A stretch of 64,000 bases of DNA from Macrostomum lignano (lineage: Eukaryota): NCBI GenBank assembly GCA_002269645.1, contig NIVC01000237.1:186001-250000 (forward strand). The letters run 5' to 3'. The notes under the pieces were generated by a model. That model worked only from the letters and a program-made list of their open reading frames with translations. It had not been told where the DNA came from and made no database searches. A program made the position numbers and the translations under genes. Shown here piece by piece: positions 1 to 50,594 of the stretch (its first letter is position 1; each line of letters opens with the position of its first letter).

Positions 1-243
1 GTCCAATGAAACACGACGATTTTTCTTGGATAAAATTTGTCGCTACCAAAGATAATTCTTGCAATAGCTGTCCCATATCACCAGTTGCAAAGATTGAATA
101 CTCTGCAACTTGTATTTGTTATCCGAGTGTCCGAGAAGATTGTGCCTACATTAAGAAATCATTTCAACTAATTAAGAATTTAGACCCTTCATGGATATTA
201 GGTCATTTCGTAATAACTATATATTTATGACAAAATCCCTCAG

Positions 244-727
244 ACACCCGGATTTTAATCTAAAAGACGTCGGTTTGTGGAAAGTTTCGCTCAAGTCTGC
301 TTGTCTACACGTGGACGTGAGCGGCTGCTGGCCCTTCATCGACGTGGCATTCTACGAGGTGCAGGGCAGCTGGATGGTGCAAAAGTTCGGCAGGTTTTAC
401 GCGCCGACAAAGTACACGTTTCCGTTGCACAAGCGACCGTTCATGGGCCGCTGGGTGGACTCGCCCAGGGATACAGAAAAATTTCTTGAATACTTATATT
501 TTGGATTTTGGCCACTCGACTGGTGCTTAACATCGCCGTATTCTCACAAATATGAAAAGTCAATTTATTCTCGCAGTTCCATAAAATGTTCGAAGCTCCA
601 CGAGACCTACCCTTTTGTGATTCGTGTCCCGGACACGGAACCATGGTGTGCCGGCGTCGTGGAGACGTTGAAGCTTCCGAGCGGCGAAACGGTTTACACT
701 GTGATGGTCGATGAACCGGTGGCTTGA
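244..727 (+). CDS. LicD-family (fukutin-related) nucleotidyltransferase, last coding exon; 5' exons lie before the window
   Basis: Acceptor cctcag|a at 243, open frame to TGA at 725-727 (WPFIDVAFYE...FPLHKRPFMGRW...VMVDEPVA*). Colinear with the minus-strand paralogue whose upstream exon carries the LicD motif [20 protein letters not shown]. Confidence 0.75.
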
Positions 728-3802: not shown

Positions 3803-4685
3803 CTAATAATGAGCCTAGATTTAGTATTGAAGCGACGGTAAGAGTTGAAAGTTGGCGGTACTGACCTGATCTTGACCGCTATTTGAGTTGAGACAAAAAC
3901 ATTACTGTGCAGAGTCTATAACTGTTCAGCGCGAAGTTAGATCTCTGCTGTAGAAATAAAAAGTACCATCATTTTTCCCAGGCAGGCACTTAATCAAATC
4001 CCTTTAATACCATACTCGTAGACTACTTTTAAGCCTACATGAATGGAATAAAAGTTCAAGTGAAAACTTTCATTTAATGCCCACAAAAATTGCAAGTTTT
4101 GTTTTCATCAAATAAAAGTGTCCATGGTTGCAATGTGGGTTCTTTGCCCCTGCACCCCTACTTTCCCCACGCTCTTTCCCACGATTTTTCCTGCGGCTGA
4201 TGTCTATGGCCAAGCCTTATTCTATCCAGAAAGCGATGCAGTAGGTTCTGCAAAACATTTCTAAAATCAACTATACTTTTTGTAACACAATATAAATGTG
4301 TAAAAGTTTGCATTAAACGCAAAAAGTGTGCCTATAAATGGCTCGTGAAAGCGTATTAGTTAGAGTCATATAATATAATTCACAAGAAATCTATTTTGAG
4401 TGACAATACTCATTTTTTGAGCACTCGTAACCAAGACATTTAAGAACTCAGAACCAAGTATTTGAATCCTATATTTATTCGCGAGTGCTGCTCGAGGTAC
4501 ATCAGTGCAGTCTATATATTTCCTCATAATTAGTAATTCGCCAGTCTAATGTTGGAAATATGGGTCAAGCTATTCTATGGCTGCATTGATTCATAGGCGT
4601 CAATCAAAGGAAATACAAAGTGGGACTAAATTCATTACTAAGGGAAGTTGAGCATTCGTACAATAAAAAGCACTAAAGCTGAGAA

Positions 4686-7623
4686 ATGGCGGCCATTGTG
4701 AAATCTGCCCAACTTCTGGTCACGGCCTGCTGCCTGCTGCTGATGCTGCTGACTGCCCGCGCGACTGGCTGCATGTCCCTCGGCTCCAGTGAGTGGCCGC
4801 TGGATACCTTTGTGCCGCTTATTGTGAGACGGACTGGCAGTGAGGGACTGGCAGTGAGAGGGAGAGACTGGCAGTGAGAGGGAGAGACTGGCAGTGAGGG
4901 ACTGACAGTGAGAGGGAGAGACTGGCAGTGAGAGGGAGAGACTGGTAGTGAGAGGGAGAGACTGGCAGCGAGAGGGAGAGACTGGCAGCGAGAGGGAGAG
5001 ACTGGCAGCGAGGGGGAGAGACTGGAAGCGAGAGGGAGAGACTGGCAGCGAGAGGGAGAGACTGGCAGCGAGAGGGAGAGACTGGCAGCGAGGGAGAGAG
5101 ACTGGCAGCGAGAGGGAGAGACTGGCAGCGAGAGGGAGAGACTGGAAGCGAGAGGGAGAGACTGGCAGTGAGAGGGAGAGACTGGCAGCGAGAGGGAGAG
5201 ACTGGCAGCGAGAGGGAGAGACTGGCAATGAGGGACTGGCAGTGAGAGGGAGAGACTGGCAATGAGGGACTGGCAGTGAGAGGGAGAGACTGGCAGCGAG
5301 AGGGAGAGACTGGCAGCGAGAGGGAGAGGCTGGTAGTGAGAGGGAGAGACTGGCAGCGAGAGGGAGAGACTGGCAGCGAGAGGGAGGGACTGGCAGTGAG
5401 AGGGAGAGACTGGCAGCGAGAGGGAGAGACTGGCAGCGAGAGGGAGAGACTGGCAATGAAGGACTGGCAGTGAGAGGGAGAGACTGGCAGCGAGAGGGAG
5501 AGACTGGCAGCGAGAGGGAGAGACTGGCAGTGAGAGAGAGAGACTGGCAGCGAGAGGGAGAGACTGGCAGCGAGAGGGAGAGACTGGCAGCGAGAGGGAG
5601 AGGCTGGTAGTGAGAGGGAGAGACTGGCAGCGAGAGGGAGAGGCTGGCAGCGAGAGGAAGAGACTGGCAGCGAGAGGGAGGGACTGGCAGTGAGAGGGAG
5701 AGACTGGCAGCGAGAGGGAGAGACTGGCAGTGAGAGGGAGAGACTGGCAGTGAGAGGGAGAGACTGGCAGTGAGAGGGAGAGACTGGCAGTGAGAGGGAG
5801 AGACTGGCAGCGAGAGGGAGAGACTGGCAGCGAGAGGGAGAGACTGGCAGCGAGGGGGAGATACTGGCAGCGAGGGGGAGAGACTGGAAGCGAGAGGGAG
5901 AGACTGGCAGCGAGAGGGAGAGACTGGCAGCGAGAGGGAGAGACTGGCAGCGAGGGAGAGAGACTGGCAGCGAGAGGGAGAGACTGGCAGCGAGAGGGAG
6001 AGACTGGAAGCGAGAGGGAGAGACTGGCAGTGAGAGGGAGAGACTGGCAGCGAGAGGGAGAGACTGGCAGCGAGAGGGAGAGACTGGCAATGAGGGACTG
6101 GCAGTGAGAGGGAGAGACTGGCAATGAGGGACTGGCAGTGAGAGGGAGAGACTGAAAGCGAGAGGGAGAGACTGGCAGCGAGAGGGAGAGGCTGGTAGTG
6201 AGAGGGAGAGACTGGCAGCGAGAGGGAGAGACTGGCAGCGAGAGGGAGGGACTGGCAGTGAGAGGGAGAGACTGGCAGCGAGAGGGAGAGACTGGCAGCG
6301 AGAGGGAGAGACTGGCAATGAGGGACTGGCAGTGAGAGGGAGAGACTGGCAGCGAGAGGGAGAGACTGGCAGCGAGAGGGAGAGACTGGCAGTGAGAGAG
6401 AGAGACTGGCAGCGAGAGGGAGAGACTGGCAGCGAGAGGGAGAGACTGGCAGCGAGAGGGAGAGGCTGGTAGTGAGAGGGAGAGACTGGCAGCGAGAGGG
6501 AGAGGCTGGCAGCGAGAGGAAGAGACTGGCAGCGAGAGGGAGGGACTGGCAGTGAGAGGGAGAGACTGGCAGCGAGAGGGAGAGACTGGCAGTGAGAGGG
6601 AGAGACTGGCAGTGAGAGGGAGAGACTGGCAGTGAGAGGGAGAGACTGGCAGTGAGAGGGAGAGACTGGCAGCGAGAGGGAGAGACTGGCAGCGAGAGGG
6701 AGAGACTGGCAGCGAGGGGGAGATACTGGCAGCGAGAGGGAGAGACTGGCAATGAGGGACTGGCAGTGAGAGGGAGAGACTGGCAGCGAGAGGGAGAGAC
6801 TGGCAGCGAGAGGGAGAGACTGGCAGTGAGAGGGAGAGACTGGCAGCGAGAAGGAGAGACTGGCAGTGAGAGGGAGAGACTGGCAATGAGGGACTGGCAG
6901 TGAGAGGGAGAGACTGGCAATGAAGGACTGGCAGTGAGAGGGAGAGACTGGCAGCGAGAGGGAGAGACTGGCAGTGAGAGGGAGAGACTGGCAGCGAGGG
7001 GGAGATATTGGCAGCGAGAGGGAGAGACTGGCAATGAGAGGGAGAGACTGGAAGCGAGAGGGAGAGACTGGCAGCGAGAGGGAGAGGCTGGTAGTGAGAG
7101 GGAGAGACTGGCAGCGAGAGGGAGAGACTGGCAGCGAGAGGGAGAGACTGGCAGCGAGGGAGAGAGACTGGCAGCGAGAGGGAGAGACTGGCAGCGAGGG
7201 AGAGAGACTGGCAGCGAGAGGGAGAGACTGGCAGCGAGAGGGAGAGGCTGGTAGTGAGAGAGAGAGACTGGCAGCGAGAGGGAGAGACTGGCAGTGAGAG
7301 GGAGAGACTGGCAGCGAGAGGGAGAGGCTGGTAGTGAGAGGGAGAGACTGGCAGCGAGAGGGAGAGGCTGGTAGTGAGAGGGAGAGACTGGCAGCGAGAG
7401 GGAGAGACTGGCAGCGAGAGGGAGAGACTGGCACTGAGAGGGAGAGACTGGCAGCGAGGGAGAGAGACTGGCAGCGAGAGGGAGAGGCTGGTAGTGAGAG
7501 GCAGTTAGTCCCCAGACTCAGCACGCCAGCCGCTCCGCCATTGCAGTGATCGGAGACTACATCGGAGACACCATCGTCACCAAGGGCGTGTCCTATGCCA
7601 CCAGTGTGGACAAGCGCGGCTGA
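4686..7623 (+). CDS. Predicted 59-aa secreted peptide precursor, join(4686..4788,7547..7623): MAAIVKSAQLLVTACCLLLMLLTARATG/CMSLGSMIGDYIGDTIVTKGVSYATSVDKRG*
   Basis: Hydrophobic signal peptide with A-T-G cleavage site. Donor CA|GTGAGT at 4789, acceptor ttgcag| at 7546, phase 1 matches. 20 of 24 exon-2 sense codons end in G/C. An alternative donor at 4824 is possible. Confidence 0.6.
4830..7500. repeat. Intronic minisatellite, 20-bp unit GACTGGCAGCGAGAGGGAGA (~130 copies)
   Basis: Tandem array read directly; fills the intron of the 4686-7623 gene. Confidence 0.97.
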
Positions 7624-8099
7624 TAAAAGAAGTCCTGAGTCGGAACTTTGCAACTCAACTGTACAAAGCTGTCAGTTAATTTGCACTACTTTCTACTAAG
7701 AGTAGTGTAAAATGAGCGACTTTTTGTTTGTTTAAATTTTAAGTAAGTAGATTTATAAAAGCCTTCTATAGAGGCAGGTACAGCAAGGCTAGGTATCTCT
7801 AAAAAAGAAGAATTACAAGCATCTTAAGTCCGTACCACTACTTAGATTATTTTTTAAAGTTTTCAAAAAACCTGTATTTAAAGTGTGACTTCTTTTTTAT
7901 ACTTAATGTGTAATGATAGAAAGTAATAATGGATGCGTTTTTAGAATTTTCGCTTGCTGTATGGGTTATATATACTACTGTAGAAATTCTTTTTAAGTAG
8001 TATTTCCTATATCTCACCATTTAGAGTTCCGAATTTAAAATGAAGCAAGCAGAAAGGAGAGAGAGGGAGGCAGAGAGGGAGTTAAAAAAGTAGGGAAAG

Positions 8100-8520
8100 G
8101 GACAGACTGACAGTCAGAGACTAGCAGTGAGAGACTGACAGTCAGAGACTAGCAGTGAGAGACTGACAGTCAGAGACTAGCAGTGAGAGACTGACAGTCA
8201 GAGACTAGCAGTGAGAGACTGACAGTCAGAGACTAGCAGTGAGAGACTGACAGTCAGAGACTAGCAGTGAGAGACTGACAGTCAGAGACTAGCAGTGAGA
8301 GACTGACAGTCAGAGACTAGCAGTGAGAGACTGACAGTCAGAGACTAGCAGTGAGAGACTGACAGTCAGAGACTAGCAGTGAGAGACTGACAGTCAGAGA
8401 CTAGCAGTGAGAGACTGACAGTCAGAGACTAGCAGTGAGAGACTGACAGTCAGAGACTAGCAGTGAGAGACTGACAGTCAGAGACTAGCAGTGAGAGACT
8501 GACAGTCAGAGACTAGCAGT
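8100..8520. repeat. Minisatellite, 28-bp unit GACTAGCAGTGAGAGACTGACAGTCAGA (dimer of 14-mers)
   Basis: About 15 near-perfect tandem copies. Confidence 0.97.
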
Positions 8521-10707: not shown

Positions 10708-11478
10708 ATACTGGCACTGAGAGACTGGCACTGAGAGACTGGCAGAGAGAGACTGGCACTGAGAGACTGGCACTGAGAGACTGGCACTGAAAGACTGGCA
10801 CTGAGAGACTGGCACTGAGAGACTGGCACTGAGAGACTGGCACTGAGAGACTGGCACTGAGAGACTGGCACTGAGAGACTGGCACTGAGAGACTGGCAGA
10901 GAGAGACTGGCAGAGAGAGACTGGCACTGAGAGACTGGCACTGAAAGACTGGCACTGAGAGACTGGCACTGAGAGACTGGCACTGAGAGACTGGCACTGA
11001 GAGACTGGCACTGAGAGACTGGCACTGAAAGACTGGCACTGAAAGACTGGCACTGAGAGACTGGCACTGAGAGACTGGCACTGAGAGACTGGCACTGAGA
11101 GACTGGCACTGAAAGACTGGCACTGAAAGACTAGCACTGAGAGACTGGCACTGAAAGACTGGCACTGAGAGACTGGCACTGAAAGACTGGCACTGAGAGA
11201 CTGGCACTGAAAGACTGGCACTGAGAGACTGGCACTGAAAGACTGGCACTGAGAGACTGGCACTGAGAGACTGGCACTGAGAGACTGGCACTGAAAGACT
11301 GGCACTGAGAGACTGGCACTGAAAGACTGGCACTGAGAGACTGGCACTGAAAGACTGGCACTGAGAGACTGGCACTGAAAGACTGGCACTGAGAGACTGG
11401 CACTGAAAGACTGGCACTGAGAGACTGGCACTGAGAGACTGGCACTGAAAGACTGGCACTGAGAGACTGGCACTGAGA
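10708..11478. repeat. Minisatellite, 14-bp unit GACTGGCACTGA(G/A)A
   Basis: About 55 tandem copies. Confidence 0.97.
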
Positions 11479-13159
11479 GGTGTCATTATAAAAAAGCGGC
11501 AACGCTAGAAGTACAGTTGTTGTTATCTAAATTGATTTCTCAAAGATGTGCTTGTTTGCCCAGCGCTGAATGGAGTTCTGCCATAGACAAAATCGGTTGG
11601 AGAAAAATCTCTCGAGAGAAGCCACAATTCAGTGAAACTTCGCTAGAACTTCGCTTCCTTGCCAGTCTCCAGTAGCAGTTCATTTAACAATGTATGATTA
11701 TCGAGACCGGCCTCGACGCTATGGCAGTTGTGTGTGAAGCGTGACCTCTCGATAGTGGAATTGTGTCTATTTTCGTCCAAAAACCAATTCAAAACGGCTA
11801 GGACACAACTTCCCAGACGTGAATTGTTCACTAAGTGATTCTAGGGATTTGTGTCATAGGCATTTTCCACTTGGCGCAAGCCAAATGATGGCCATAGACT
11901 AAACGTTTGGAACGAAAAGCTAAGCGGAACAGTCTGAAATTACCATAGACGAAACATGTTAAATGAAGTTGTGGTCTTATAAGCTGGAACTCTGCAGCAG
12001 AGGATACATGTTCCTGTTTCTTCTGTTTGCCCTAACCTCTGTACATGCCACTCATACGAATGATAAATTGGTCGAATTTGCCGATTGAAAGCATTTAAGG
12101 CTTGAATGGAAATGAGGTCAACTTTCTCAGCGACTTGAGTATAGGTGGACGTGACGAGGCGAATGACGAAGAGTTGATGGAGTCCATCCGGATTCATTGA
12201 ATGCGGTAACGATGATGCTCTGCCACCACTGCCAAGCAAAGAAGAGGCTTGCCCCGAGGATCCCATGCGGAACAAACCATGCAATTCGGCCGATGCGAGT
12301 GAAAAAAATATCCTCGCAAACGCTTGACCATAGACTATATGACCATATGACCATAGACTATATGACCATAGGCTTGACCATAGACTATTCGCAAATAAGC
12401 AATCTGTTGTATTCAGCTGTTTCGATGCCTGAAAGGCGCGCAAAAATTTACTTAGTTCACAATTTCCGTCGACACAATCGTTTGTGGCCCAAACGAAACT
12501 AGGCACAATGGCAGTTTGATAAACGTGCGCACTGAACCAGTGGTATTTTTGCCTTAACCTCTTTGTTTCAACCTTTTCAGTGCTGCAATACAGCTAGCAA
12601 ATTAAGCAATTGTGAGCTGCAGCTATTTGCAAAAGCAATTAATTAAAAACTGTTCGAAGCACTGCTCAATTTGAATAGCCAGGCATCTCGACTCTGCTTG
12701 GCAAAACGGCTTTTAGTGCGCCTGGCAACCGAAATTGCTTTCGCTAAAAGGCTGATTGAAGAGCGCGGTTAGCATATTTTTCAGAACAATACTGACGATG
12801 GAGACGCAAAGTCTGACTCTGGATTTTGTGCATTAACAAAAAGATTTTTTTTAATTTTCATTTTCAGTTAAACAAAATTTTGAAACGCAATTATTTAAAA
12901 GAGAACTTGCGATGTCATGGCTCATGATGGAGTTGCTGAGATGTGCTGCCTGTGCTCTTGACGTAGATCTCGCATCCCCTCCCCTAGCCAACAATCTGTG
13001 ATTGAACAACAGCGAGAGGCGCCAGTCAAATCTTTCCCAGCTTCCCCTGGCAACGCCCTCAAGCACATAAAAACCAATTTGCAATTTTGCGCCGCTCTTA
13101 GATCTGCTTTTAATAATTCTGACAAGATTAAATTTGCAAGCAGTGAAATTTTAACTGCA

Positions 13160-14174
13160 ATGAAGCTGCCGATTCTGCTGCTGCTGCTGCCGCAAATCCT
13201 TCTGGCGTCTCACGGGCTGCAGCGCCAAGCTGAGTTCCGCCGGCTGAGCAGCGCCAACGGCTCGGCAGCGCCGCTGCGCTTTCACTTGAGTGGCGACAGC
13301 TCCGCCATTTACTGCGGAAGTCGCTGCGCTGAGCTGGCCGACTGCTTTGGGTTCGCCTTCGTCAGGCTGCTCTGCCGGCTGTTCACCTTCGATGCGTTCT
13401 TCGACACCTGGACGGCCTCCGAGCCGGGGACCGCCGTTTTCACCCGGCCGCTCAGTGAGTCTATATGGATATCCTTAGTGCTGAAAGCAATGCAATTCAG
13501 GATTGATAAAACCAGCGCCGAGGCAATTCTGACCATTTCGCTGACCCTTGAGCACGATGCATGTACACCCTTGAGCACAATGCATGTACACCCTTGAGCA
13601 CAATGCATGTACACCCTTGAGCACAATGCATGTACACCCTTGAGCACAATGCATGTACACTCTTGAGCACAATGCATGTACACCCTTGAGCACGATGCAT
13701 GTACACCCTTGAGCACATGGAATCGATCAGTTATAACTTCAAGCATACAATTTATTAACCTGCTCAGATATGGTCCAGCTGCCGATGCAGAGCTGCTCTC
13801 AGAGTTCAGTATTTGATGACGGCGTCTGCTCCCGAGCAATCGACGGCAACACTGATCAAGATCTAACCCGAGGCTCCTGTACCCATACCGGCTGCTGGCC
13901 CAGTATGCGGCAGTGGTGGACCGCCAACTTCTCTGCTGCATCGTTTGTCTCTTACGTGATCATCTACAACCGGGTGGACTGCTGCTCAAGGAGGCTGGAC
14001 GCATTCTCCATCCTACTGGATGGAGTGAGCTGCGCTGAGAGAAACGAAACGTTCTCATTCTCGGTCGGCAACTTCACGTGCGGCAGATTCGGCAGTCAAC
14101 TGACTGTGCTCAACAGCCCGGCAGAGTGCCTGAGCATGTGCGAGCTTAAAGCCTATGGCTTCAGGTTCCCTTGA
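13160..14174 (+). CDS. Secreted PAN/apple-like + F-type lectin (fucolectin) domain protein, join(13160..13454,13768..14174)
   Basis: Signal peptide MKLPILLLLLPQILLASHG. PAN-like CGSRCAELADCFGFAF...CRL. F-lectin motifs QSS...RAIDGN...CTHT...WW...YNRVDCCSRRL (H...RxDxxxxR). Donor a|gtgagt at 13455, acceptor ctcag| at 13767, phase 1. Confidence 0.85.
13545..13716. repeat. Intronic minisatellite, 23-bp GCATGTACACCCTTGAGCACAAT
   Basis: About 7 copies in the lectin intron. Confidence 0.95.
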
Positions 14175-15699: not shown

Positions 15700-17050
15700 C
15701 GAAGCCCTTTAAAAGGTGCAGGGACGTGCGTGCCGCATGATCCTGAATGCCCCGCTCTCTGCTCCCTTTGACGGCCTCTCAACGCTTTTCTCTGCCTCCC
15801 GCCCCTGGACATCTTCGTCCGTCGCGAGGCTGCTAAAACCACCCGCCGGCTCATCGAGGCTGGCGTTAGCTTCAAGCCACAAAGAGCGATGGCGAAGCGC
15901 AAGCTCCTGCCGCACTCTGACCTGAGCCTTAAAGTTCTGGAGGAGAGCGGGAGTGCGGCTGTCCTTTCGGACGCTTGAGCCGCGCTCCCTCAATCTCTAC
16001 CAACGCTTCAAGGTCACGATCCCTCTAGGGAGAACGCCAACGACAGCTGGGCCCCTCAGGAGGTTGGACTGCTTCACTGGATCCTCCAAAGACGGTTTAT
16101 CCGGTTTTGGAATCTGCATCCTTATCAACGGCCGCGTGATCGCTACTCACGCCCAACACACTGGCAGACTCTCCAGCGTCTTCCAGAACGAAGTCCTTGC
16201 CATCAACTCCTGTGCAGCTGAGCTCCACTGCAGGGACTTCAAGGACAGAAGAATCTTCTTCCACTCTGACAGCCAGGCCGCTTTACAGGCCCTGTGTCAC
16301 ACCACTACGAACTCCCGAACAGTCCGTGACTGTATCGGGCAGCTCAACAAGCTGGCTTGGAGAAACACCGTCCGGCTTACGTGGATCCCAGGACACGCCG
16401 CCTTCAAAGGTAACGAGCTCGCCGACTCCCTCGCTAAGGCAGGCTGTTCCGGCTCGCTCCTTGGCCCCGTGCCCCTGGCCCCCATCCCCGCCACAGTCAT
16501 TAATGTCAGATTAACGACTGGGCGGACATCCTGCACTTGCGCAGATGGGGTGGCATTTCCAACTGCCGCCAATCTCGTGCAGCTGTGCCCAATCCGTCCC
16601 TCAAGCTGCGGAGAATTCTTTTGAACCAAAATCGAAAAGATATCCGCGCTCTCACTATGACCTTCACTGGTCACGGTTGCTTTGCCAGGCACTGCTTCCT
16701 CCGAAGTGTTCGCCGGAGCGAACTCTGCCCCTTCTGCAACCTCGAGAACGAAGACGCCAAGCACTTCGTCTGCTACTGCCCGGCCTTCAACCGAGACCGG
16801 CTCAACCACCTTGGGCCCAACCCGTCCCTAGACGACGCTTGCCGGCCCGAGAACATCCCATGGCTCATCCGGTTCCTCCGGGCCACCAAACGAGCCTCCG
16901 TCTTCCCCACCGAAGACAACGCTGCAGACAGGACCGGCAGACCTCCCTGACCGGCCCCGCGCCCTAGCCTATGCGGGTCTTTCAGGGATTAGCGGAATGG
17001 GCGACGCTCGCCTCCCTGCTGCGTCTTCGGACCGCCCTGCAGCTAAGTCT
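15700..17050 (+). mobile_element. 5'-truncated, degenerate non-LTR retrotransposon (LOA/R1/I-group-like): post-RT linker, RNase H, CCHC knuckle, 3' UTR
   Basis: QGRACRMILNAPLSAP...PPLDIFVRREA (linker). SVFQNEVLAI...SDSQAAL...WIPGH...GNELADSLAK (RNase H). FTGHG...CPFC...EDAKHFVCYCPAF (zinc knuckle). Several frameshifts; the catalytic TDGS reads TGSS. Confidence 0.85.
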
Positions 17051-17056
17051 AAAAGC

Positions 17057-17858
17057 CCCCCTCTCTCCCACTCCCCTCTCTCCCATTCCCCTCACTCCCA
17101 CTCCCCTCTCCCCCACTCTCCCTCTCCCCCACTCCCGCTCTCTCCCACTACCTTCTCTCCCACTCTCTCCCACTCCCCTCTCTCCTACTCCCCTCTCTCC
17201 CACTCCCCTCTCCCCCACACTCCCTCTCCCCCACTCCCCCCTCTCTCCCACTCCCCTCTCTCCCATTCCCCTCTCTACCACTCCCATCTCTCCCACTCCC
17301 ATCTCTCCCACTCCCATCTCTCCCACTCCCATCTCTCCCACTCCCATCTCTCCCACTCCCATCTCTCCCACTCCCATCTCTCCCACTCCCATCTCTCCCA
17401 CTCCCATCTCTCCCACTCCCATCTCTCCCACTCTCTACCACTCCCATCTCTCCCACTCCCATCTCTCCCACTCCCATCTCTCCCACTCCCATCTCTCCCA
17501 CTCCCATCTCTCCCACTCCCATCTCTCCCACTCCCATCTCTCCCACTCCCATCTCTCCCACTCCCATCTCTCCCACTCTCTACCACTCCCATCTCTCCCA
17601 CTCCCATCTCTCCCACTCCCATCTCTCCCACTCCCATCTCTCCCACTCCCATCTCTCCCACTCCCATCTCTCCCACTCCCATCTCTCCCACTCCCATCTC
17701 TCCCACTCCCATCTCTCCCACTCTCTACCACTCCCATCTCTCCCACTCCCATCTCTCCCACTCCCATCTCTCCCACTCCCATCTCTCCCACTCTCTACCA
17801 CTCCCATCTCTCCCACTCCCATCTCTCCCACTCTCTACCACTCCCCTCTCTCCCATTC
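17057..17858. repeat. Pyrimidine-rich array, 15-bp CTCTCCCACTCCCAT
   Basis: Read directly; right flank of the LINE fragment. Confidence 0.95.
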
Positions 17859-17879
17859 CGAATAATGCGAGTATGGATT

Positions 17880-20800
17880 TCGCTAGAGTTGCCCCGGCCC
17901 TCTCCAACTGCAGCGCCATCTGAAGGAAGTTCGTAGCGGTGGAGTAGGGTCTCGAACCCGCGGCCATCTGGTACACTGAGCAGCCAAACGCCCAGATGTC
18001 CGATTTGCGGCTGTACCGCGGACCAGCCGCTGGGTCATCTGGCGCCAGCAGCTCCGGCGCTAGAAAGTTCAACGTGCCCTTTGGTGAAGAAGTAGACGCT
18101 GTCACGCGACTGACAGCTTGTTCAAGTTTGATTGACAGGCCGAAATCGATTAATTTTATGCGATTGTCAGCTAAGCAAACAATCATATTGCTGCAGTTGA
18201 TGTCTCTGTGTATCACCGGCGGCTTCCGGCCGTGCATGTAGCTCAGGGCGCTGCAGATCTGCCGGGGTGGGTGCGCCGGAGTCATTGAAGCTCATTCTAA
18301 CTGCTTCTTTTAGTTTGTTCATGATGAAGGATCCTGGTGCCATTCATTGATCAGATCCTGGTGCCATTCATTGATCAGATCCTGGTGCCATTCATTGATC
18401 AGATCATTGCGCCACTTCTTAATCATATCTTGGCACCCCTTGTTCTCATTCCCAGAATCCTTCCTGTGCGGTGAACTTCTTAATAACAGCTTCATCAAGA
18501 GGCTTGCTGTCGATAAAAGTCTCCAAGCTGCAACCGTCCAGCAGCTCCATGAACAGGACAATCTTGGCGGACTCCAGCTTGGCGATGTGAAAGAATTTCA
18601 CGATATTCGGATGGTCCAGCAGACAGAAGTTTCTCTCGCTCTCCACTACCCTTCTGACCTCTCTGGCTTTGAGATCGTCCTGCATCTGCTGATGCTGCAG
18701 CTGCACTGGCAGCTGGATGGTTTTGGCAGCGCAGCGGAACCGGATATCGGTGAGAACTTCGTGCACCTCGCCGAATCCTCCGCGGCCTAGCGGGCGTTTG
18801 TTGTCCCAGGTGTGGCGGAATGGCCGGCTGCAAAATGAAGCTTATCTTCTTTTAAGAGCTTATTTTTGGAAAATTTGAGAAACTAATTTTTCTGGAAAAA
18901 TGTTCTGCTCTTACGAATCGAGTTTGACGTCGTCAAAGTAGTTCCTGCCTTCGTACATGCGGTTGATTGGGGCAATAGGAAAGTCCTTTAGTTCCTGCAT
19001 ACTTCAGGTTATGTCTTATAATTCAGGTCCCACACCCTTCAGCTCCTGAGATCCCACACCCTTCAGCTCCTGAGATCCCACACCCTTCAGCTCCTGAGTT
19101 CCTACACCCTTCAGCTCCTGAGATCCCACACCCTTCAGCTCCTGATATCCCACACCCTTCAGCTCCTGAGATCCCACACCCTTCAGCTCCTGAGTTCCTA
19201 CACCCTTCAGCTCCTGATATCCCACACCCTTCAGCTCCTGATATCCCACACCCTTCAGCTCCTGAGATCCCACACCCTTCAGCTCCTGAGATCCCACACC
19301 CTTCAGCTCCTGAGATCCCACACCCTTCAGCTCCTGAGGCCCCACACCCTTCAGCTCCTGAGATCCCACACCCTTCAGCTCCTGAGTTCCTACACCCTTC
19401 AGCTCCTGAGATCCCACACCCTTCAGCTCCTGATATCCCACACCCTTCAGCTCCTGAGATCCCACACCCTTCAGCTCCTGATATCCCACACCCTTCAGCT
19501 CCTGAGATCCCACACCCTTCAGCTCCTGAGTTCCTACACCCTTCAGCTCCTGAGATCCCACACCCTTCAGCTCCTGAGGCCCCACACCCTTCAGCTCCTG
19601 AGATTCCACACCCTTCAGCTCCTGAGGCCCCACACCCTTCAGCTCCTGAGATCCCACACCCTTCAGCTCCTGAGATTCCACACCCTTCAGCTCCTGAGTT
19701 CCTACACCCTTCAGCTCCTGAGATCCCACACCCTTCAGCTCCTGAGATCCCACACCCTTCAGCTCCTGATATCCCACACCCTTCAGCTCCTGAGATCCCA
19801 CACCCTTCAGCTCCTGAGATTCCACACCCTTCAGCTCCTGAGATCCCACACTCTTCAGCTCCTGAGGCCCCATCGCTCACTCCAGCAGCAGCTCGACCAG
19901 GTCGCTGCTCCTGTGCTCCCTGGCCAAGTCCAGCGCTGTTCGCCCCTTCCAGTCTTTGAGGCTCCAGTCGGCGCCAGCCGCTAGCAGAGCGGCGCCAACA
20001 GCCGCGCCAGTCGCATCTGGCGCCAGCGCCGCCAGCATCAGCGCAGTGCTCGAGTTGAGATTCGGAGAATTCACCGGAGCGCCAGCCTCCACCAGAGATG
20101 AAGCTGCCACGAAATTGCATCCGCTAGCAGCCAAATGCAAGCAGTTGCCCGAGAACATGTTGCTGGCACAGGTCCCACAGGTCCACGCTGTTTAGATCCG
20201 GGTTCCCTGCCGCCCACATCAGCACCGTCCGGCCCTCGGTGTCCGGTAAGTCGCAGCTGTCCGCCGACGCCAAATTTTTAAGTCCAATTGAATCACCCTT
20301 CTTGGCGAGTGAAATCAGCTGATCGCGGATGGCCGCATCCTGGATTGACGACGGATTGTTTATTATTCAAAGTATTTAACTAAATGGCGCTTGAAATACA
20401 GGTAATGAATGAGTACAGGTAACTTACGAAATGAGACAAGCCGGAGAGCTCGATTCCCCTCAGTACGAGCTGCGTCTCCCAGCAACAGGGAATTGGATTG
20501 GCAGAAATCCGGCTTGTGCTACTTTAAGTAGAAACCTTTTAGTCTCGAGATGGACGGTTATGATCTGTTGTAGAAGGTGGTTGGTTCTGTGGAGTGGTTG
20601 GTGCTGTCGGTGGTGGGTGCTGTGGGGTGGGTGGTTCTGTGGGGTGGGTGGTTTCTGCAGGGTGGGTGGTTCTGTGGGGTGGATGGTTTCTGCAGGGTGG
20701 TGGGTTCTGTGGGGTGGATGGTTTCTGCAGGGTGGTGGGTTCTGTGGGTTGTGGGTGCTGTGGGTGGGTGCTGTGAGGTGGTGGGTGCTGTAGGTGGGGG

Positions 20801-23944: not shown

Positions 23945-24849
23945 ATGCGCGCCATCACTCAGTTGTTTCTGGTCAGCTGTCTGGTGCTGATTGCAGCAGC
24001 TGGTCTGAGCGAGGCCTGCCTAGCCCGTAAGTGGAGCCGCTTCGATTGGCCTGTTTCGAGTATAGGTATATATATATATATATATAAATACTTCGGATTT
24101 TCCTGATTTTTTTTGAAAAAAAGAGACTGATTAAGTGTCCAATGTATGAAAAAGTTAAAGGAAATCAAAGATCAAAAGGTCAAATCCGCCCCCTCTATCC
24201 ACACTGCGAACAATCCAATCCACCCCCTCTATCCACACTGCGAACAATCCAATCCGCCCCCTCTATCCACACTGCAAACAATCCAATCCACCCCCTCTAT
24301 CCACACTGCGAACAATCAAATCCGCCCATCTATTCACACTGCGAACAATCCAATCCGCCCCTCTATCCACACTGCGAACAATCCAATCCGCCCCTCTATC
24401 CACACCGCAAGCGATCAAATCCGCCCCCTTCTATCCACACTGCGAACGATCAAATCCGCCCCTCTATCCACACCGCAAGCGATCAAATCCGCTCCTCTAT
24501 CCACACCGCAAGTGATCAAATCCGCCCCTCTATCCACACCGCAAGTGATCAAATCCGCCCCCTTCTATCCACACTGCGAACGATCAGATGCACCCCCTCT
24601 ATCCACACCGCAAGCAATCAAATCCGCCCCTCTATCCACACCGCAAGCAATCAAATCCGCCCCCTTCTATCCACACTGCGAACGATCAAATCCGCCCCCT
24701 CTATCCACACAGCGAGTCATGGAGTGTCTCATCATGCTCAAAATCAACTCCCGCTACCCCACCCTCTGTCTGCAGCCATACTCGGTGCGGTGGGCGGCAA
24801 GCTGCATAAAATTATAGCAAAGAAGATCAAGTACGTCATCAAAGGCTGA
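23945..24849 (+). CDS. Predicted 51-aa secreted cationic peptide precursor A, join(23945..24026,24776..24849): MRAITQLFLVSCLVLIAAAGLSEA/CLAPILGAVGGKLHKIIAKKIKYVIKG*
   Basis: Signal peptide with S-E-A site. Donor c|gtaagt at 24027, pyrimidine-tract acceptor ccctctgtctgcag| at 24775, phase 1. Exon 1 is identical (82/82 nt) to copy B while the flanks diverge. Confidence 0.75.
24180..24712. repeat. Intronic minisatellite, ~34-bp CCACAC(C/T)GC(A/G)AGCGATCAAATCCGCCCCCTCTAT
   Basis: Read directly, in the peptide A intron. Confidence 0.95.
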
Positions 24850-27661: not shown

Positions 27662-29218
27662 ATGCGCGCCATCACTCAGTTGTTTCTGGTCAGCTGTCTG
27701 GTGCTGATTGCAGCAGCTGGTCTGAGCGAGGCCTGCCTAGCCCGTAAGTGGAGCCGCTTCCTGGGTGGGTCTCTTTAAGTTTAGGTATATTATAATAAAA
27801 TATGCTATTTCAGAATTCCGGATTTTATGAAACTTCCAGCGACTGACTCAGTGCCCAATGTGAAAAAAAGTTGAAGAAATCAAAGGTCAAAAAATCCTAA
27901 ACCACCCCCAAAATCCACACCGTAAAAAATCAAATCCGCCTCCTCTATCCACACCGTAAAAAATCAAATCCGCCTCCTCTATCCACACCGCAAGCAATCA
28001 AATCCGCCCCCTCTATCCACACCGCAAGCGATCAAATCCGCCCCCTCTATCCACACCGCAAGCGATCAAATCCGCTGCCTCTATCCACACCGCAAGCGAT
28101 CAAATACGCCTCCTCTATCCACACCGCAAGCGATCAAATCCACCTCCTCTATCCACACCGCAAGCGATCAAATCCGCCCCCTCTATCCACACCGCAAGCG
28201 ATCAAATCCGCTGCCTCTATCCACACCGCAAGCGATCAAATACGCCTCCTCTATCCACACCGCAAGCGATCAAATCCGCCCCCTCTATCCACACCGCAAG
28301 CGATCAAATCCGCCCCCTCTATCCACACCGCAAGCGATCAAATCCGCTGCCTCTATCCACACCGCAAGCGATCAAATACGCCTCCTCTATCCACACCGCA
28401 AGCGATCAAATCCACCTCCTCTATCCACACCGCAAGCGATCAAATCCGCCCCCTCTATCCACACCGCAAGCGATCAAATCCACCCCCTATATCCAAACCG
28501 CAAGCGATCAAATCCACCCCCTCTATCCACACCGCAAGCGATCAAATCCACCCCCTATATCCAAACCGCAAGCGATCAAATCCACCCCCTCTATCCACAC
28601 CGCAAGCGATCAAATCCACCCCCTATATCCACACCGCAAGCGATCAAATCTGCCCTCTCTATACACACCGCAAGCGATCAAATCCACCCCCTATATCCAA
28701 ACCGCAAGCGATCAAATCCACCCCCTCTATCCACACCGCAAGCGATCAAATCCACCCCCTATATCCACACCGCAAGCGATCAAATCTGCCCTCTCTATAC
28801 ACACCGCAAGCGATCAAATCCACCCCCTCTATCCACACCGCAAGCGATCAAATCCACCCCCTCTATCCACACCGCAAGCGATCAAATCCACCCCCTCTAT
28901 CCACACCGCAAGCGATCAAATCCACCCCCTCTATCCACACCGCAAGCGATCAAATCCACCCCCTCTATCCACAACGCAAGCGATCAAATCCACCCCTCTA
29001 TCCACACCGCAAGCGATCGAATCCACCCCCTCTATCCACACCGCAAGCGATCAAATCCACCCCCCTCTATCCACAGAGCGAGTCATGGAGTGTCTCATCA
29101 CGCTCAAAATCAACTCCCGCTACCCCACCCTCTGTCTGCAGCCATACTCGGTGCGGTGGGCGGCAAGCTGCATAAAGTGATAGCAAAGAAGATCAAGAAA
29201 ATCAAGTTCCGAGGCTGA
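27662..29218 (+). CDS. Predicted 52-aa secreted cationic peptide precursor B, join(27662..27743,29142..29218): MRAITQLFLVSCLVLIAAAGLSEA/CLAPILGAVGGKLHKVIAKKIKKIKFRG*
   Basis: Same donor (27744) and acceptor (29141) as copy A; phase 1; ends Gly-stop. Confidence 0.75.
27895..29076. repeat. Intronic minisatellite, 34-bp CCACACCGCAAGCGATCAAATCC(G/A)CCCCCTCTAT (~34 copies)
   Basis: Read directly, in the peptide B intron. Confidence 0.97.

Positions 29219-34330: not shown

Positions 34331-39811
<5,481 letters not shown>

Positions 39812-41013: not shown

Positions 41014-50594
<9,581 letters not shown>

What the first reader, a model, noticed from the sequence alone, without database searches (positions are those of the whole stretch)
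4686..7623. Third micro-gene with the same Cys-start/Gly-stop design: possible new secreted-peptide family
Seen: like the two cationic genes, exon 1 encodes a signal peptide plus a few mature residues starting with Cys. A phase-1 minisatellite-filled intron ends in TGCAG, and exon 2 is 77 nt (same length as copy B) and ends cgc ggc tga (copy B: cga ggc tga). The predicted mature CMSLGSMIGDYIGDTIVTKGVSYATSVDKR-G is near neutral, so its function may differ (hormone, pheromone or adhesive rather than AMP). Amino-acid identity to A/B is low, so homology is inferred from architecture only. A single free N-terminal Cys in all three suggests disulfide dimers or N-terminal acylation (speculative; cf. 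Hedgehog N-Cys palmitoylation).
Basis: partly seen in the sequence, partly recalled or inferred. Interest (0 to 1): 0.7.

Follow-up and report, generated by a model that had tools for sequence, protein, structure and literature searches.

The report
Orphan flatworm secreted-peptide micro-gene
This is a real, already annotated but uncharacterised two-exon gene of the flatworm Macrostomum lignano that most likely makes a small secreted, amidated helical peptide; nothing beyond gene layout and position ties it to the two neighbouring cationic peptide genes.

Summary
Exon 1 (4686-4788) and exon 2 (7547-7623), joined across a phase-1 intron filled by 136 copies of a 20-bp minisatellite, encode a 59-aa product. 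That product is 100% identical to NCBI hypothetical protein BOX15_Mlig029347g3 of Macrostomum lignano, whose annotation is RNA-seq guided.

- **Real gene:** it occurs in three homeologous loci. Its coding sequence is 3-8 times more conserved than the flanks (p 0.001-0.004), and GC3 is 0.80 against 0.36 GC in the flanks.
- **Family claim not supported by sequence:** similarity to neighbours A/B is not significant at protein, promoter or splice-context level. A phmmer scan of 1.84 billion proteins finds only itself.
- **The shared "design" is mostly generic:**
  - Tandem repeats cover 38% of the window.
  - A phase-1 intron after a signal peptide is common (background knowledge).
  - The 77-nt exon 2 contains its own 12-nt tandem duplication.
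  - Published SignalP 4.1 output cleaves A/B five residues before the Cys.
- **Prior knowledge:** A/B are already listed as AMP-like peptides (Irvine 2023). Gene C is not.

Best reading: a lineage-restricted secreted peptide of about 30 aa, net charge 0, predicted helical, with a GxxxGxxxG motif and a single Cys. Its role is unknown. Interest is modest.

The parts
4513..4521 (+). TATA-like box (TATATATTT) about 170 bp upstream of the ATG; candidate core promoter
   Evidence: Sequence inspection. Conserved in all three homeologous copies. Function is inferred, not shown.
4686..4788 (+). Exon 1 coding part (103 nt): Met, signal peptide, then CMSLGS and the first base of the Met35 codon
   Evidence: The translation equals residues 1-34 of PAA87302.1.
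4686..4769 (+). Predicted signal peptide (28 aa if cut at ATG|C, 26 aa if cut at ARA|TG): n-region MAAIVK, h-region SAQLLVTACCLLLMLL, c-region TARATG
   Evidence: Sequence inspection with the (-3,-1) rule. A weak Pfam hit to a bacterial signal region (TraW_N, E 0.017) reflects signal-likeness only. SignalP was not available.
4770..4772 (+). TGC codon of the only Cys outside the signal peptide (Cys29), at position +1 or +3 of the mature peptide
   Evidence: The cleavage site is unresolved.
4789..7546 (+). Phase-1 intron, 2758 nt, GTGAGT...TTGCAG
   Evidence: The gene spans 2938, 2773 and 1178 bp in the three homeologs with identical exon lengths, so intron length varies.
4842..7501 (+). 20-bp minisatellite (GAGAGACTGGCAGCGAGAGG, 136 copies) filling the intron; it carries 47 GTGAG and 110 GGCAG decoy splice-like motifs
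7547..7623 (+). Exon 2 coding part (77 nt): (M)IGDYIGDTIVTKGVSYATSVDKRG plus TGA
7549..7572 (+). In-frame 12-nt tandem duplication ATCGGAGACTAC / ATCGGAGACACC (IGDY/IGDT); it contributes Gly9 and Gly13 of the G5xxxG9xxxG13 glycine-zipper motif (Gly5 lies in exon 1)
   Evidence: Sequence inspection. The motif occurs in 2.1% of shuffles (a post hoc test).
7612..7623 (+). Lys-Arg-Gly-stop: the C-terminal Gly is a candidate amide donor, giving ...VDKR-NH2
   Evidence: Sequence. Amidation is inferred from the general PHM/PAL rule and was not tested.
23945..24849 (+). Comparator gene A (exons 23945-24026 and 24776-24849), cationic peptide, PAA87303.1 / Mlig003473g1
   Evidence: Listed as an AMP-like peptide in PMC10414684 file S5.
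27662..29218 (+). Comparator gene B (exons 27662-27743 and 29142-29218), cationic peptide, PAA87304.1 / Mlig003880g1
   Evidence: Listed as an AMP-like peptide in PMC10414684 file S5.

Best explanation
Gene C is a functional, lineage-restricted (orphan) two-exon gene of Macrostomum lignano, annotated as Mlig029347. It encodes a 59-aa precursor of a small secreted peptide.

**Shown**
- The spliced ORF exists and matches the transcript-based annotation.
- It is kept in three homeologous loci under sequence constraint.
- It has no detectable relatives.

**Inferred mechanism**
1. The N-terminal 26-28 residues target the precursor to the ER and are removed, at ARA|TG or ATG|C.
2. The terminal Gly is consumed by peptidylglycine alpha-hydroxylating monooxygenase and its lyase (PHM/PAL). 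This leaves a peptide of about 30 residues ending in Arg-amide.
3. The peptide is a single helix. Its N-terminal half carries a GxxxGxxxG packing face. Its one Cys, next to the N-terminus, favours a disulfide-linked dimer.
4. It is released from a secretory (gland or epidermal) cell.

Because it is net neutral and not clearly amphipathic, it is not itself a classical membrane-lytic cationic AMP. Its link to the neighbouring cationic genes A/B is positional and architectural, not demonstrable homology.
For: - **Splice model and annotation:** the exact splice model equals the NCBI protein. The annotation pipeline is RNA-seq and transcriptome guided.
- **Copies:** three homeologous copies have variable intron length and conserved exons.
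- **Constraint:** CDS divergence is 0.6-1.7% against 4.7-7.9% in non-coding flanks, Fisher p 0.001-0.004. The three distinct CDS substitutions are two synonymous changes and one change in the signal peptide.
- **Coding signal:** GC3 is 0.80 against flank GC of 0.34-0.38.
- **Signal-like N-terminus:** it has small residues at -3/-1.
- **Fold:** AlphaFold2 in single-sequence mode predicts a helix over residues 4-28 of the mature peptide, pLDDT 82.
- **Motif:** GxxxGxxxG is present.
- **Physical chemistry:** net charge is 0 and amphipathicity is not above shuffles.
- **Orphan status:** there are no homologs among 5.8 billion clustered proteins or 1.84 billion representatives. The only other hits are repeat artefacts.
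- **Families and structures:** nothing in Pfam or the PDB.
- **AMP catalogue:** gene C is absent from the published flatworm AMP-like list that contains A/B.
Against: - There is no direct expression, tissue, peptide or activity data. The gene ids are absent from the supplements of five M. lignano expression papers that could be searched.
- SignalP could not be run.
- AlphaFold2 without an alignment tends to give helices for short peptides.
- The K-R-G-stop order is atypical for prohormone processing. Cleavage after KR with no amidation is possible.
- The three copies are young, so the constraint signal rests on few substitutions. Gene conversion could mimic it.
- Absence of homologs is weak evidence for a 59-aa gene, which gene callers usually miss.
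Confidence: 0.5

Rival explanations
1. Gene C is a highly diverged tandem paralog of A/B. All three then form one fast-evolving, architecture-defined family of Cys-bearing, C-terminally amidated peptides. C would have lost its cationic character and gained another role, for example as a neutral partner chain.
For: - The order LicD - C - A(-B) and the same strand are kept in all three homeologous loci, 12-19 kb apart.
- All are two-exon genes with a phase-1 intron 3-6 codons after a single Cys, and all end in basic-Gly-stop.
- All have a GxxxG-type motif shortly after the Cys.
- Short secreted effector peptides often diverge beyond recognition (background knowledge).
Against: - No test reaches significance: BLASTP E 0.04 and 0.67, shuffles p 0.04-0.67, anchored alignments p 0.07-0.43.
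- Signal peptides are usually the conserved part of such families, but here they are not similar, and no third protein shares either.
- Promoters, UTRs, intron ends and repeat units are unrelated.
- Unrelated genes lie between C and A: an F5/8-type-C lectin-like exon, a retroelement fragment and a kinase exon.
- The shared traits are individually common.
- The equal exon-2 length depends on a duplication private to gene C.
Confidence: 0.25
2. Gene C encodes a neuropeptide or peptide-hormone precursor. The peptide would be released from neurons or endocrine-like cells and act on a receptor.
For: - It has a signal peptide, a short single-peptide precursor, a C-terminal Gly and a dibasic KR site.
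- Flatworms, including M. lignano, have many lineage-specific small prohormone-like genes. Repetitive KR-flanked precursors appear in the same published list.
Against: - The order K-R-G-stop is the reverse of the canonical Gly-Lys-Arg.
- At 30 residues the peptide is long for a flatworm neuropeptide, and it has no conserved C-terminal motif.
- No relatives exist in any other flatworm.
- No expression data are available.
Confidence: 0.15
3. The ORF is a fortuitous small ORF on a transcribed but non-coding or pseudogenic locus, with no functional product.
For: - The product is only 59 aa and is annotated as 'hypothetical protein'.
- It has no homologs.
- The M. lignano annotation contains obvious repeat-derived pseudo-proteins.
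Against: - GC3 is 0.80 in an AT-rich context.
- The frame is kept across a 1-2.8 kb intron in three copies.
- The CDS is significantly more conserved than its flanks, and the changes are mostly synonymous.
- It has a well-formed signal peptide.
Confidence: 0.1

Closest known systems
Neighbouring genes A/B (BOX15_Mlig003473g1, Mlig003880g1, Mlig009903g1/g2), catalogued as 'ungrouped' AMP-like peptides of M. lignano in Irvine et al. 2023, PLoS Pathog (PMC10414684, file S5)
   Same: - Same locus and strand.
- Two exons with a phase-1 intron just after the signal peptide plus a few residues.
- One Cys near the cleavage site.
- Exon 2 of 74-77 nt.
- Ends in basic-Gly-stop.
- Restricted to M. lignano in the databases searched.
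   Different: - No significant sequence similarity in any part.
- A/B carry +6/+8 charge and form amphipathic helices scored as AMP by 10 of 11 predictors. Gene C has net charge 0, is not clearly amphipathic and is not in that list.
- The intron repeat units differ.
- The intron lies 3 codons (A/B) versus 6 codons (C) after the Cys.
Linear amidated alpha-helical host-defence peptides, and disulfide-linked dimeric ones such as halocidin, dicynthaurin and distinctin (background knowledge, not tested here)
   Same: - Short signal-peptide precursor.
- Predicted single helix.
- C-terminal Gly as amide donor.
- A single Cys that could make a homo- or heterodimer.
   Different: - Gene C lacks the net positive charge that defines the class.
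- No activity or dimer data exist.
- No sequence relationship.
Glycine-zipper (GxxxGxxxG) helix-packing peptides, for example the PGLa/magainin-2 synergistic pair (background knowledge)
   Same: - G5xxxG9xxxG13 in gene C and G7xxxG11 in A/B.
- Neighbouring genes could supply two partner chains.
   Different: - The motif in gene C was noticed post hoc (2.1% of shuffles).
- It arises partly from a 12-nt duplication.
- No evidence of interaction.
Flatworm prohormone (npp-type) genes and helminth defence molecules / mesco-type cestode AMPs (PMC2953531, PMC3708846, PMC11546468; abstracts seen)
   Same: Small, lineage-specific secreted peptide precursors of flatworms.
   Different: - No sequence similarity.
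- Different processing signals.
- HDMs are about 8 kDa and confined to trematodes.

Membership tests
A/B cationic peptide gene family of M. lignano | Significant similarity of the prepro-region or mature peptide | tested here: not met
   BLASTP E 0.041 (A) and 0.67 (B) for single comparisons. Shuffle p 0.04-0.67. Cys-anchored and intron-anchored gapless p 0.07-0.43. A/B were not retrieved by phmmer with gene C.
A/B cationic peptide gene family of M. lignano | Two-exon layout, phase-1 intron just after the signal peptide, short exon 2 ending in basic-Gly-stop | tested here: met
   exons are 103+77 (C), 82+74 (A) and 82+77 (B), all phase 1. The endings are KRG*, IKG* and FRG*. These traits are generic, and the intron position relative to the Cys differs by 3 codons.
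A/B cationic peptide gene family of M. lignano | Shared non-coding homology (promoter, UTRs, intron ends, intron repeat unit), as seen between A and B | tested here: not met
   A versus B is 82-86% identical over more than 1 kb. C versus A/B gives no blastn hit, no shared conserved 8-mers and donor/acceptor context scores within the null. Repeat units are 20 bp versus 33/34 bp and unrelated.
A/B cationic peptide gene family of M. lignano | Mature peptide begins with Cys | tested here: inconclusive
   For A/B, SignalP 4.1 output in PMC10414684 gives a mature peptide starting GLSEAC.... For gene C both ARA|TG and ATG|C fit the (-3,-1) rule. SignalP was not available here.
A/B cationic peptide gene family of M. 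lignano | Physical linkage conserved across homeologs | tested here: met
   C lies upstream of A on the same strand in NIVC01000237, NIVC01000089 and NIVC01004201. Unrelated exons lie in between.
Linear cationic alpha-helical antimicrobial peptides (functional class) | Net positive charge and an amphipathic helix | tested here: not met
   Side-chain charge is 0. The best 18-residue hydrophobic moment is 0.39 against a shuffle mean of 0.30 (p 0.16). A helix is predicted. Gene C is not in the published AMP-like list.
Amidated neuropeptide / peptide-hormone precursors | Signal peptide plus Gly-dibasic (GKR/GRR) processing sites, or a C-terminal Gly | tested here: inconclusive
   A C-terminal Gly is present, but the order is K-R-G-stop. 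There is no internal GKR site. Enzymatic processing cannot be tested in silico.
Amidated neuropeptide / peptide-hormone precursors | Orthologs or a conserved C-terminal motif in related flatworms | tested here: not met
   No hit outside M. lignano. Other Macrostomum genomes and transcriptomes could not be searched at the DNA level.
Disulfide-linked dimeric peptides / N-Cys acylated ligands | Intermolecular disulfide, or N-palmitoylation of an N-terminal Cys | not testable with these tools
   Only the presence of one Cys in the mature region is shown.

The most novel reading that the evidence does not exclude
C and A/B would be the two chain types of a flatworm-specific two-component secreted peptide system. 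The neutral chain C, with its glycine zipper, would pair with a cationic chain through helix packing and an N-proximal Cys-Cys disulfide. It would act either as a synergistic heterodimer or as a trans-acting neutralising partner, since A/B precursors lack the acidic pro-piece that most cationic AMPs carry. In that case the gene cluster would be a new, architecture-defined effector family in a phylum said to lack the classical lophotrochozoan AMP groups (PMC10414684).
Probability: 0.08. Interest if true: 0.65.

Novelty: new member of a known kind. Interest (0 to 1): 0.3.

Why it matters
Free-living flatworms have almost no characterised secreted effector peptides, and homology searches find none of the classical lophotrochozoan AMP families in the phylum (PMC10414684). 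M. lignano is transgenic- and RNAi-tractable, so a small locus with two strongly AMP-like genes and a constrained neutral orphan peptide is a cheap entry point. It could be used to study how new secreted peptides arise and work. On present evidence, however, gene C is simply one more uncharacterised, lineage-restricted small secreted-peptide gene that is already in the public annotation.

Tried and rejected
**Searches that returned nothing**
I solved this by going through the search for homologous proteins.
- The three extra phmmer hits (P0006-P0008) are long repeat proteins that score by accumulation. I rejected them.
- Pfam TraW_N (E 0.017, below cut-off) is a signal-peptide look-alike. The PDB pilin hit (E 0.14) is chance.
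- Gene ids were sought in the supplements of five M. lignano papers (genome, ageing, germline/neoblast, ploidy, intestine) and found in none. The ids and the peptide strings occur in no open main text.
- Rfam and tRNA scans of the window are empty.

**Tests of homology between C and A/B that were negative**
- A DNA-level homology hint at the donor (GTRAGTGG..CCGCT in both C and A/B) is not above the null, because 20% of other GTRAGT sites score as well.
- A search for shared promoter motifs found none.
- A wider architecture scan (signal-like ORF, small residue then Cys, GTRAG donor) over the window and five loci found only C, A and B, their homeologs and one repeat artefact.

**Other rejected readings**
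- The long minus-strand ORFs (up to 944 aa) across 4638-7653 are translations of the minisatellite, not genes.
- The alternative donor at 4824 would join in phase 0 onto TGA at 7547 and truncate the product. It is not the annotated form.

**Not used**
- I did not use the third large protein search. Both precursors had already been searched with all their words, so it would have added nothing.
Full report
**Observation**

- The ATG is at 4686 and exon 1 is 103 nt.
- The donor is CCA|GTGAGT and the acceptor is CCATTGCAG|TG.
- Exon 2 is 77 nt and ends aag cgc ggc tga. The intron is phase 1.
- The product is MAAIVKSAQLLVTACCLLLMLLTARATGCMSLGSMIGDYIGDTIVTKGVSYATSVDKRG.
- The 2758-nt intron is almost entirely a 20-bp minisatellite, GAGAGACTGGCAGCGAGAGG, 136 copies, at 4842-7501.

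With corrected coordinates they are:
- A: 23945-24026 plus 24776-24849 (82+74 nt).
- B: 27662-27743 plus 29142-29218 (82+77 nt).

**Identity of the sequence**

[quoted passage not shown] The window is part of contig NIVC01000237.1 of assembly Mlig_3_7. A and B are PAA87303.1 (Mlig003473g1) and PAA87304.1 (Mlig003880g1).

That annotation was built from RNA-seq and a de novo transcriptome using StringTie, TACO and TBONE (PMC5730564). An annotated protein identical to my splice model therefore means the 4788/7547 junction has transcript backing, although I could not see the reads themselves.

**Is it a real gene?**

The gene exists in three homeologous or duplicated loci of this neopolyploid genome: NIVC01000237, NIVC01000089 and NIVC01004201. 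The gene spans 2938, 2773 and 1178 bp, so the minisatellite length varies while exon lengths stay the same.
- Pairwise CDS divergence is 0.6-1.7%, against 4.7-7.9% in 1.2 kb of aligned non-repeat flanks and intron ends. One-sided Fisher p is 0.001-0.004.
- The three distinct CDS changes are two synonymous changes and one in the signal peptide, T13K.
- GC3 of the ORF is 0.80, while the 200-bp flanks are 34-38% GC.

Together these argue for a translated, constrained ORF rather than a chance ORF.

**Relatives**

No other protein shares words with the precursor among 5.8 billion clustered proteins. A full phmmer pass over 1.84 billion representatives returns only the protein itself and three long repeat proteins that score by accumulation. 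Pfam and PDB sequence searches give nothing meaningful. The gene is an orphan as far as these data reach. This is weak evidence, because 59-aa genes are rarely called and other Macrostomum genomes could not be searched at the DNA level.

**Is it in one family with A/B?**

Every sequence-based test is negative.
- BLASTP E values are 0.041 and 0.67 for single comparisons, and the alignments lie mostly in the hydrophobic signal region.
- Local-alignment shuffles give p 0.04-0.67.
- Pre-specified gapless alignments anchored on the Cys or on the intron give p 0.07-0.43.
- blastn finds no similarity of the flanks, and no conserved upstream 8-mers are shared.
- The apparent GTRAGTGG..CCGCT match at the donors is equalled by 20% of other GTRAGT sites in the window.

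By contrast, A and B are 82-86% identical over more than 1 kb and share their 33/34-bp intron repeat.

The architectural arguments are weaker than they look.
- Tandem repeats cover 37.7% of this window in 44 arrays and 15% of the genome, so a minisatellite in a kilobase-sized intron is expected.
- Phase-1 introns just after signal peptides are common in secreted-protein genes (background knowledge).
- TGCAG is simply a good acceptor.
- The intron lies 3 codons after the Cys in A/B but 6 codons after it in C.
- The 77-nt length that C shares with B includes a 12-nt in-frame tandem duplication private to C: ATCGGAGACTAC/ATCGGAGACACC at 7549-7572, encoding IGDY/IGDT.

What remains in favour of common descent:
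- The LicD - C - A(-B) order is conserved on one strand in all three loci. Unrelated exons lie in between: an F5/8-type-C lectin-like exon, an RNase H/RT fragment and a kinase exon.
- All have a single Cys close to the cleavage site.
- All end in basic-Gly-stop.

I put common ancestry at about one in four.

**The Cys-start**

A/B are already in the literature. Irvine et al. 2023 (PMC10414684, file S5) list Mlig003473g1, Mlig003880g1 and Mlig009903g2 as ungrouped AMP-like peptides, positive in 10 of 11 predictors. The SignalP 4.1-derived mature peptide there starts GLSEACLAP..., so the Cys is at +6, not +1.

In gene C, both ARA|TG and ATG|C satisfy the (-3,-1) rule, so an N-terminal Cys is possible but not established.

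Gene C does not occur in the held text of that file, including the place where "MAAIVK..." would sort. It was therefore not rated AMP-like, or it failed the signal-peptide filter of that pipeline.

**Properties of the predicted peptide**
- Without the terminal Gly the peptide is 30 residues (32 if cut at ARA|TG). It has three acidic and three basic side chains, so net charge is 0.
- Its helical hydrophobic moment is not above shuffles (p 0.16). A and B are +6 and +8, and A is clearly amphipathic.
- AlphaFold2 without an alignment predicts one helix, over residues 4-28 of the mature peptide, with mean pLDDT 82.5. For the whole precursor it predicts a helix over residues 2-56. This is only indicative for so short a sequence.
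- The duplication contributes Gly9 and Gly13 to a G5xxxG9xxxG13 glycine-zipper pattern (Gly5 is in exon 1). The pattern occurs in 2.1% of shuffles and was noticed post hoc. A/B have G7xxxG11.

**Most likely mechanism**

The precursor enters the ER and loses its signal peptide. The terminal Gly is probably converted to an Arg-amide, and the helical peptide is secreted. The single Cys and the glycine face make a dimer plausible. All steps after translation are inferred.

The peptide is unlikely to be a classical cationic membrane-lytic AMP. Rivals are a diverged A/B paralog or partner chain (0.25), a neuropeptide or hormone (0.15) and a non-functional ORF (0.10).

**Expression and function**

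No data could be reached.
- The gene ids are absent from the text-held supplements of five M. lignano papers.
- The ids and peptide strings occur in no open main text.
- Literature searches for M. lignano antimicrobial peptides or neuropeptides gave nothing specific.

**Verdict**

It is a new, uncharacterised member of the broad kind "lineage-restricted small secreted peptide gene". Interest is modest at 0.3. The two-chain system reading is the most novel option not excluded, at about 8%.

Noticed in passing
window 1-64000: Tandem repeats (periods 12-150 bp) cover 37.7% of the window in 44 merged arrays, 31 of them at least 300 bp. Most lie in apparent introns or intergenic DNA. Long ORFs across them, for example 4638-7653 on the minus strand with up to 944 aa, are repeat artefacts.
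   Followed up: partly
window 8104-8520 and 10710-11479: Two further minisatellites downstream of gene C have units (AGACTGACAGTCAGAGACTAGCAGTGAG; ACTGGCACTGAGAG) that share the ACTGGCAGTGAGAG core of gene C's intron repeat. This is therefore a locally dispersed repeat family, not an intron-specific one.
   Followed up: no
window 4842-7501: The intron minisatellite carries 47 GTGAG and 110 GGCAG motifs, so there are dozens of decoy splice-site-like sequences between the true donor and acceptor. How the spliceosome ignores them is unexplained.
   Followed up: no
L005 15193-16100 (NIVC01000089.1): A second, B-like cationic gene lies in this homeolog and encodes MRAITQLLLVSCLVLIAAAGLSEACLAPIFGAVGGKLHKVIAKKIKKIKFRG. 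It was not among the cluster members returned, so it may be unannotated. The third homeolog (L004) shows only one cationic gene within 10 kb.
   Followed up: partly
window 12998-14174 (+): This looks like a secreted lectin-like gene between C and A. One exon has a signal-like stretch (MKLPILLLLLPQILLASHG). A second exon matches the F5/8 type C / NedA-like galactose-binding domains (PF22633, E 8.9e-10).
   Followed up: partly
window 15953-16950 (+): RNase H / reverse-transcriptase-like ORF fragments (PF00075, E 1.7e-8), i.e. a retroelement remnant between C and A.
   Followed up: no
window 17725-18285 (-): A protein kinase domain exon (PF00069, E 2.5e-25) flanked by minisatellites.
   Followed up: no
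window 38103-38930 (-) and about 41900-48850 (-): An MBT-repeat exon (PF02820, E 1.7e-27). Next to it is a multi-exon DEAD-box helicase of the DDX5/17 type, with the [11 protein letters not shown] and HRIGRTAR motifs readable in the ORF translations. Its introns are packed with minisatellites.
   Followed up: no
window 191-727 (+): This is the last exon of a 314-aa LicD-family (PF04991) gene that lies upstream of gene C in all three homeologous loci. The exon alone gave no Pfam hit. The family assignment comes from the precomputed annotation.
   Followed up: partly
L003 10001-10103 (NIVC01004201.1): The third copy of gene C carries T13K, which places a Lys inside the hydrophobic core of the signal peptide. 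This may weaken secretion of that copy.
   Followed up: no
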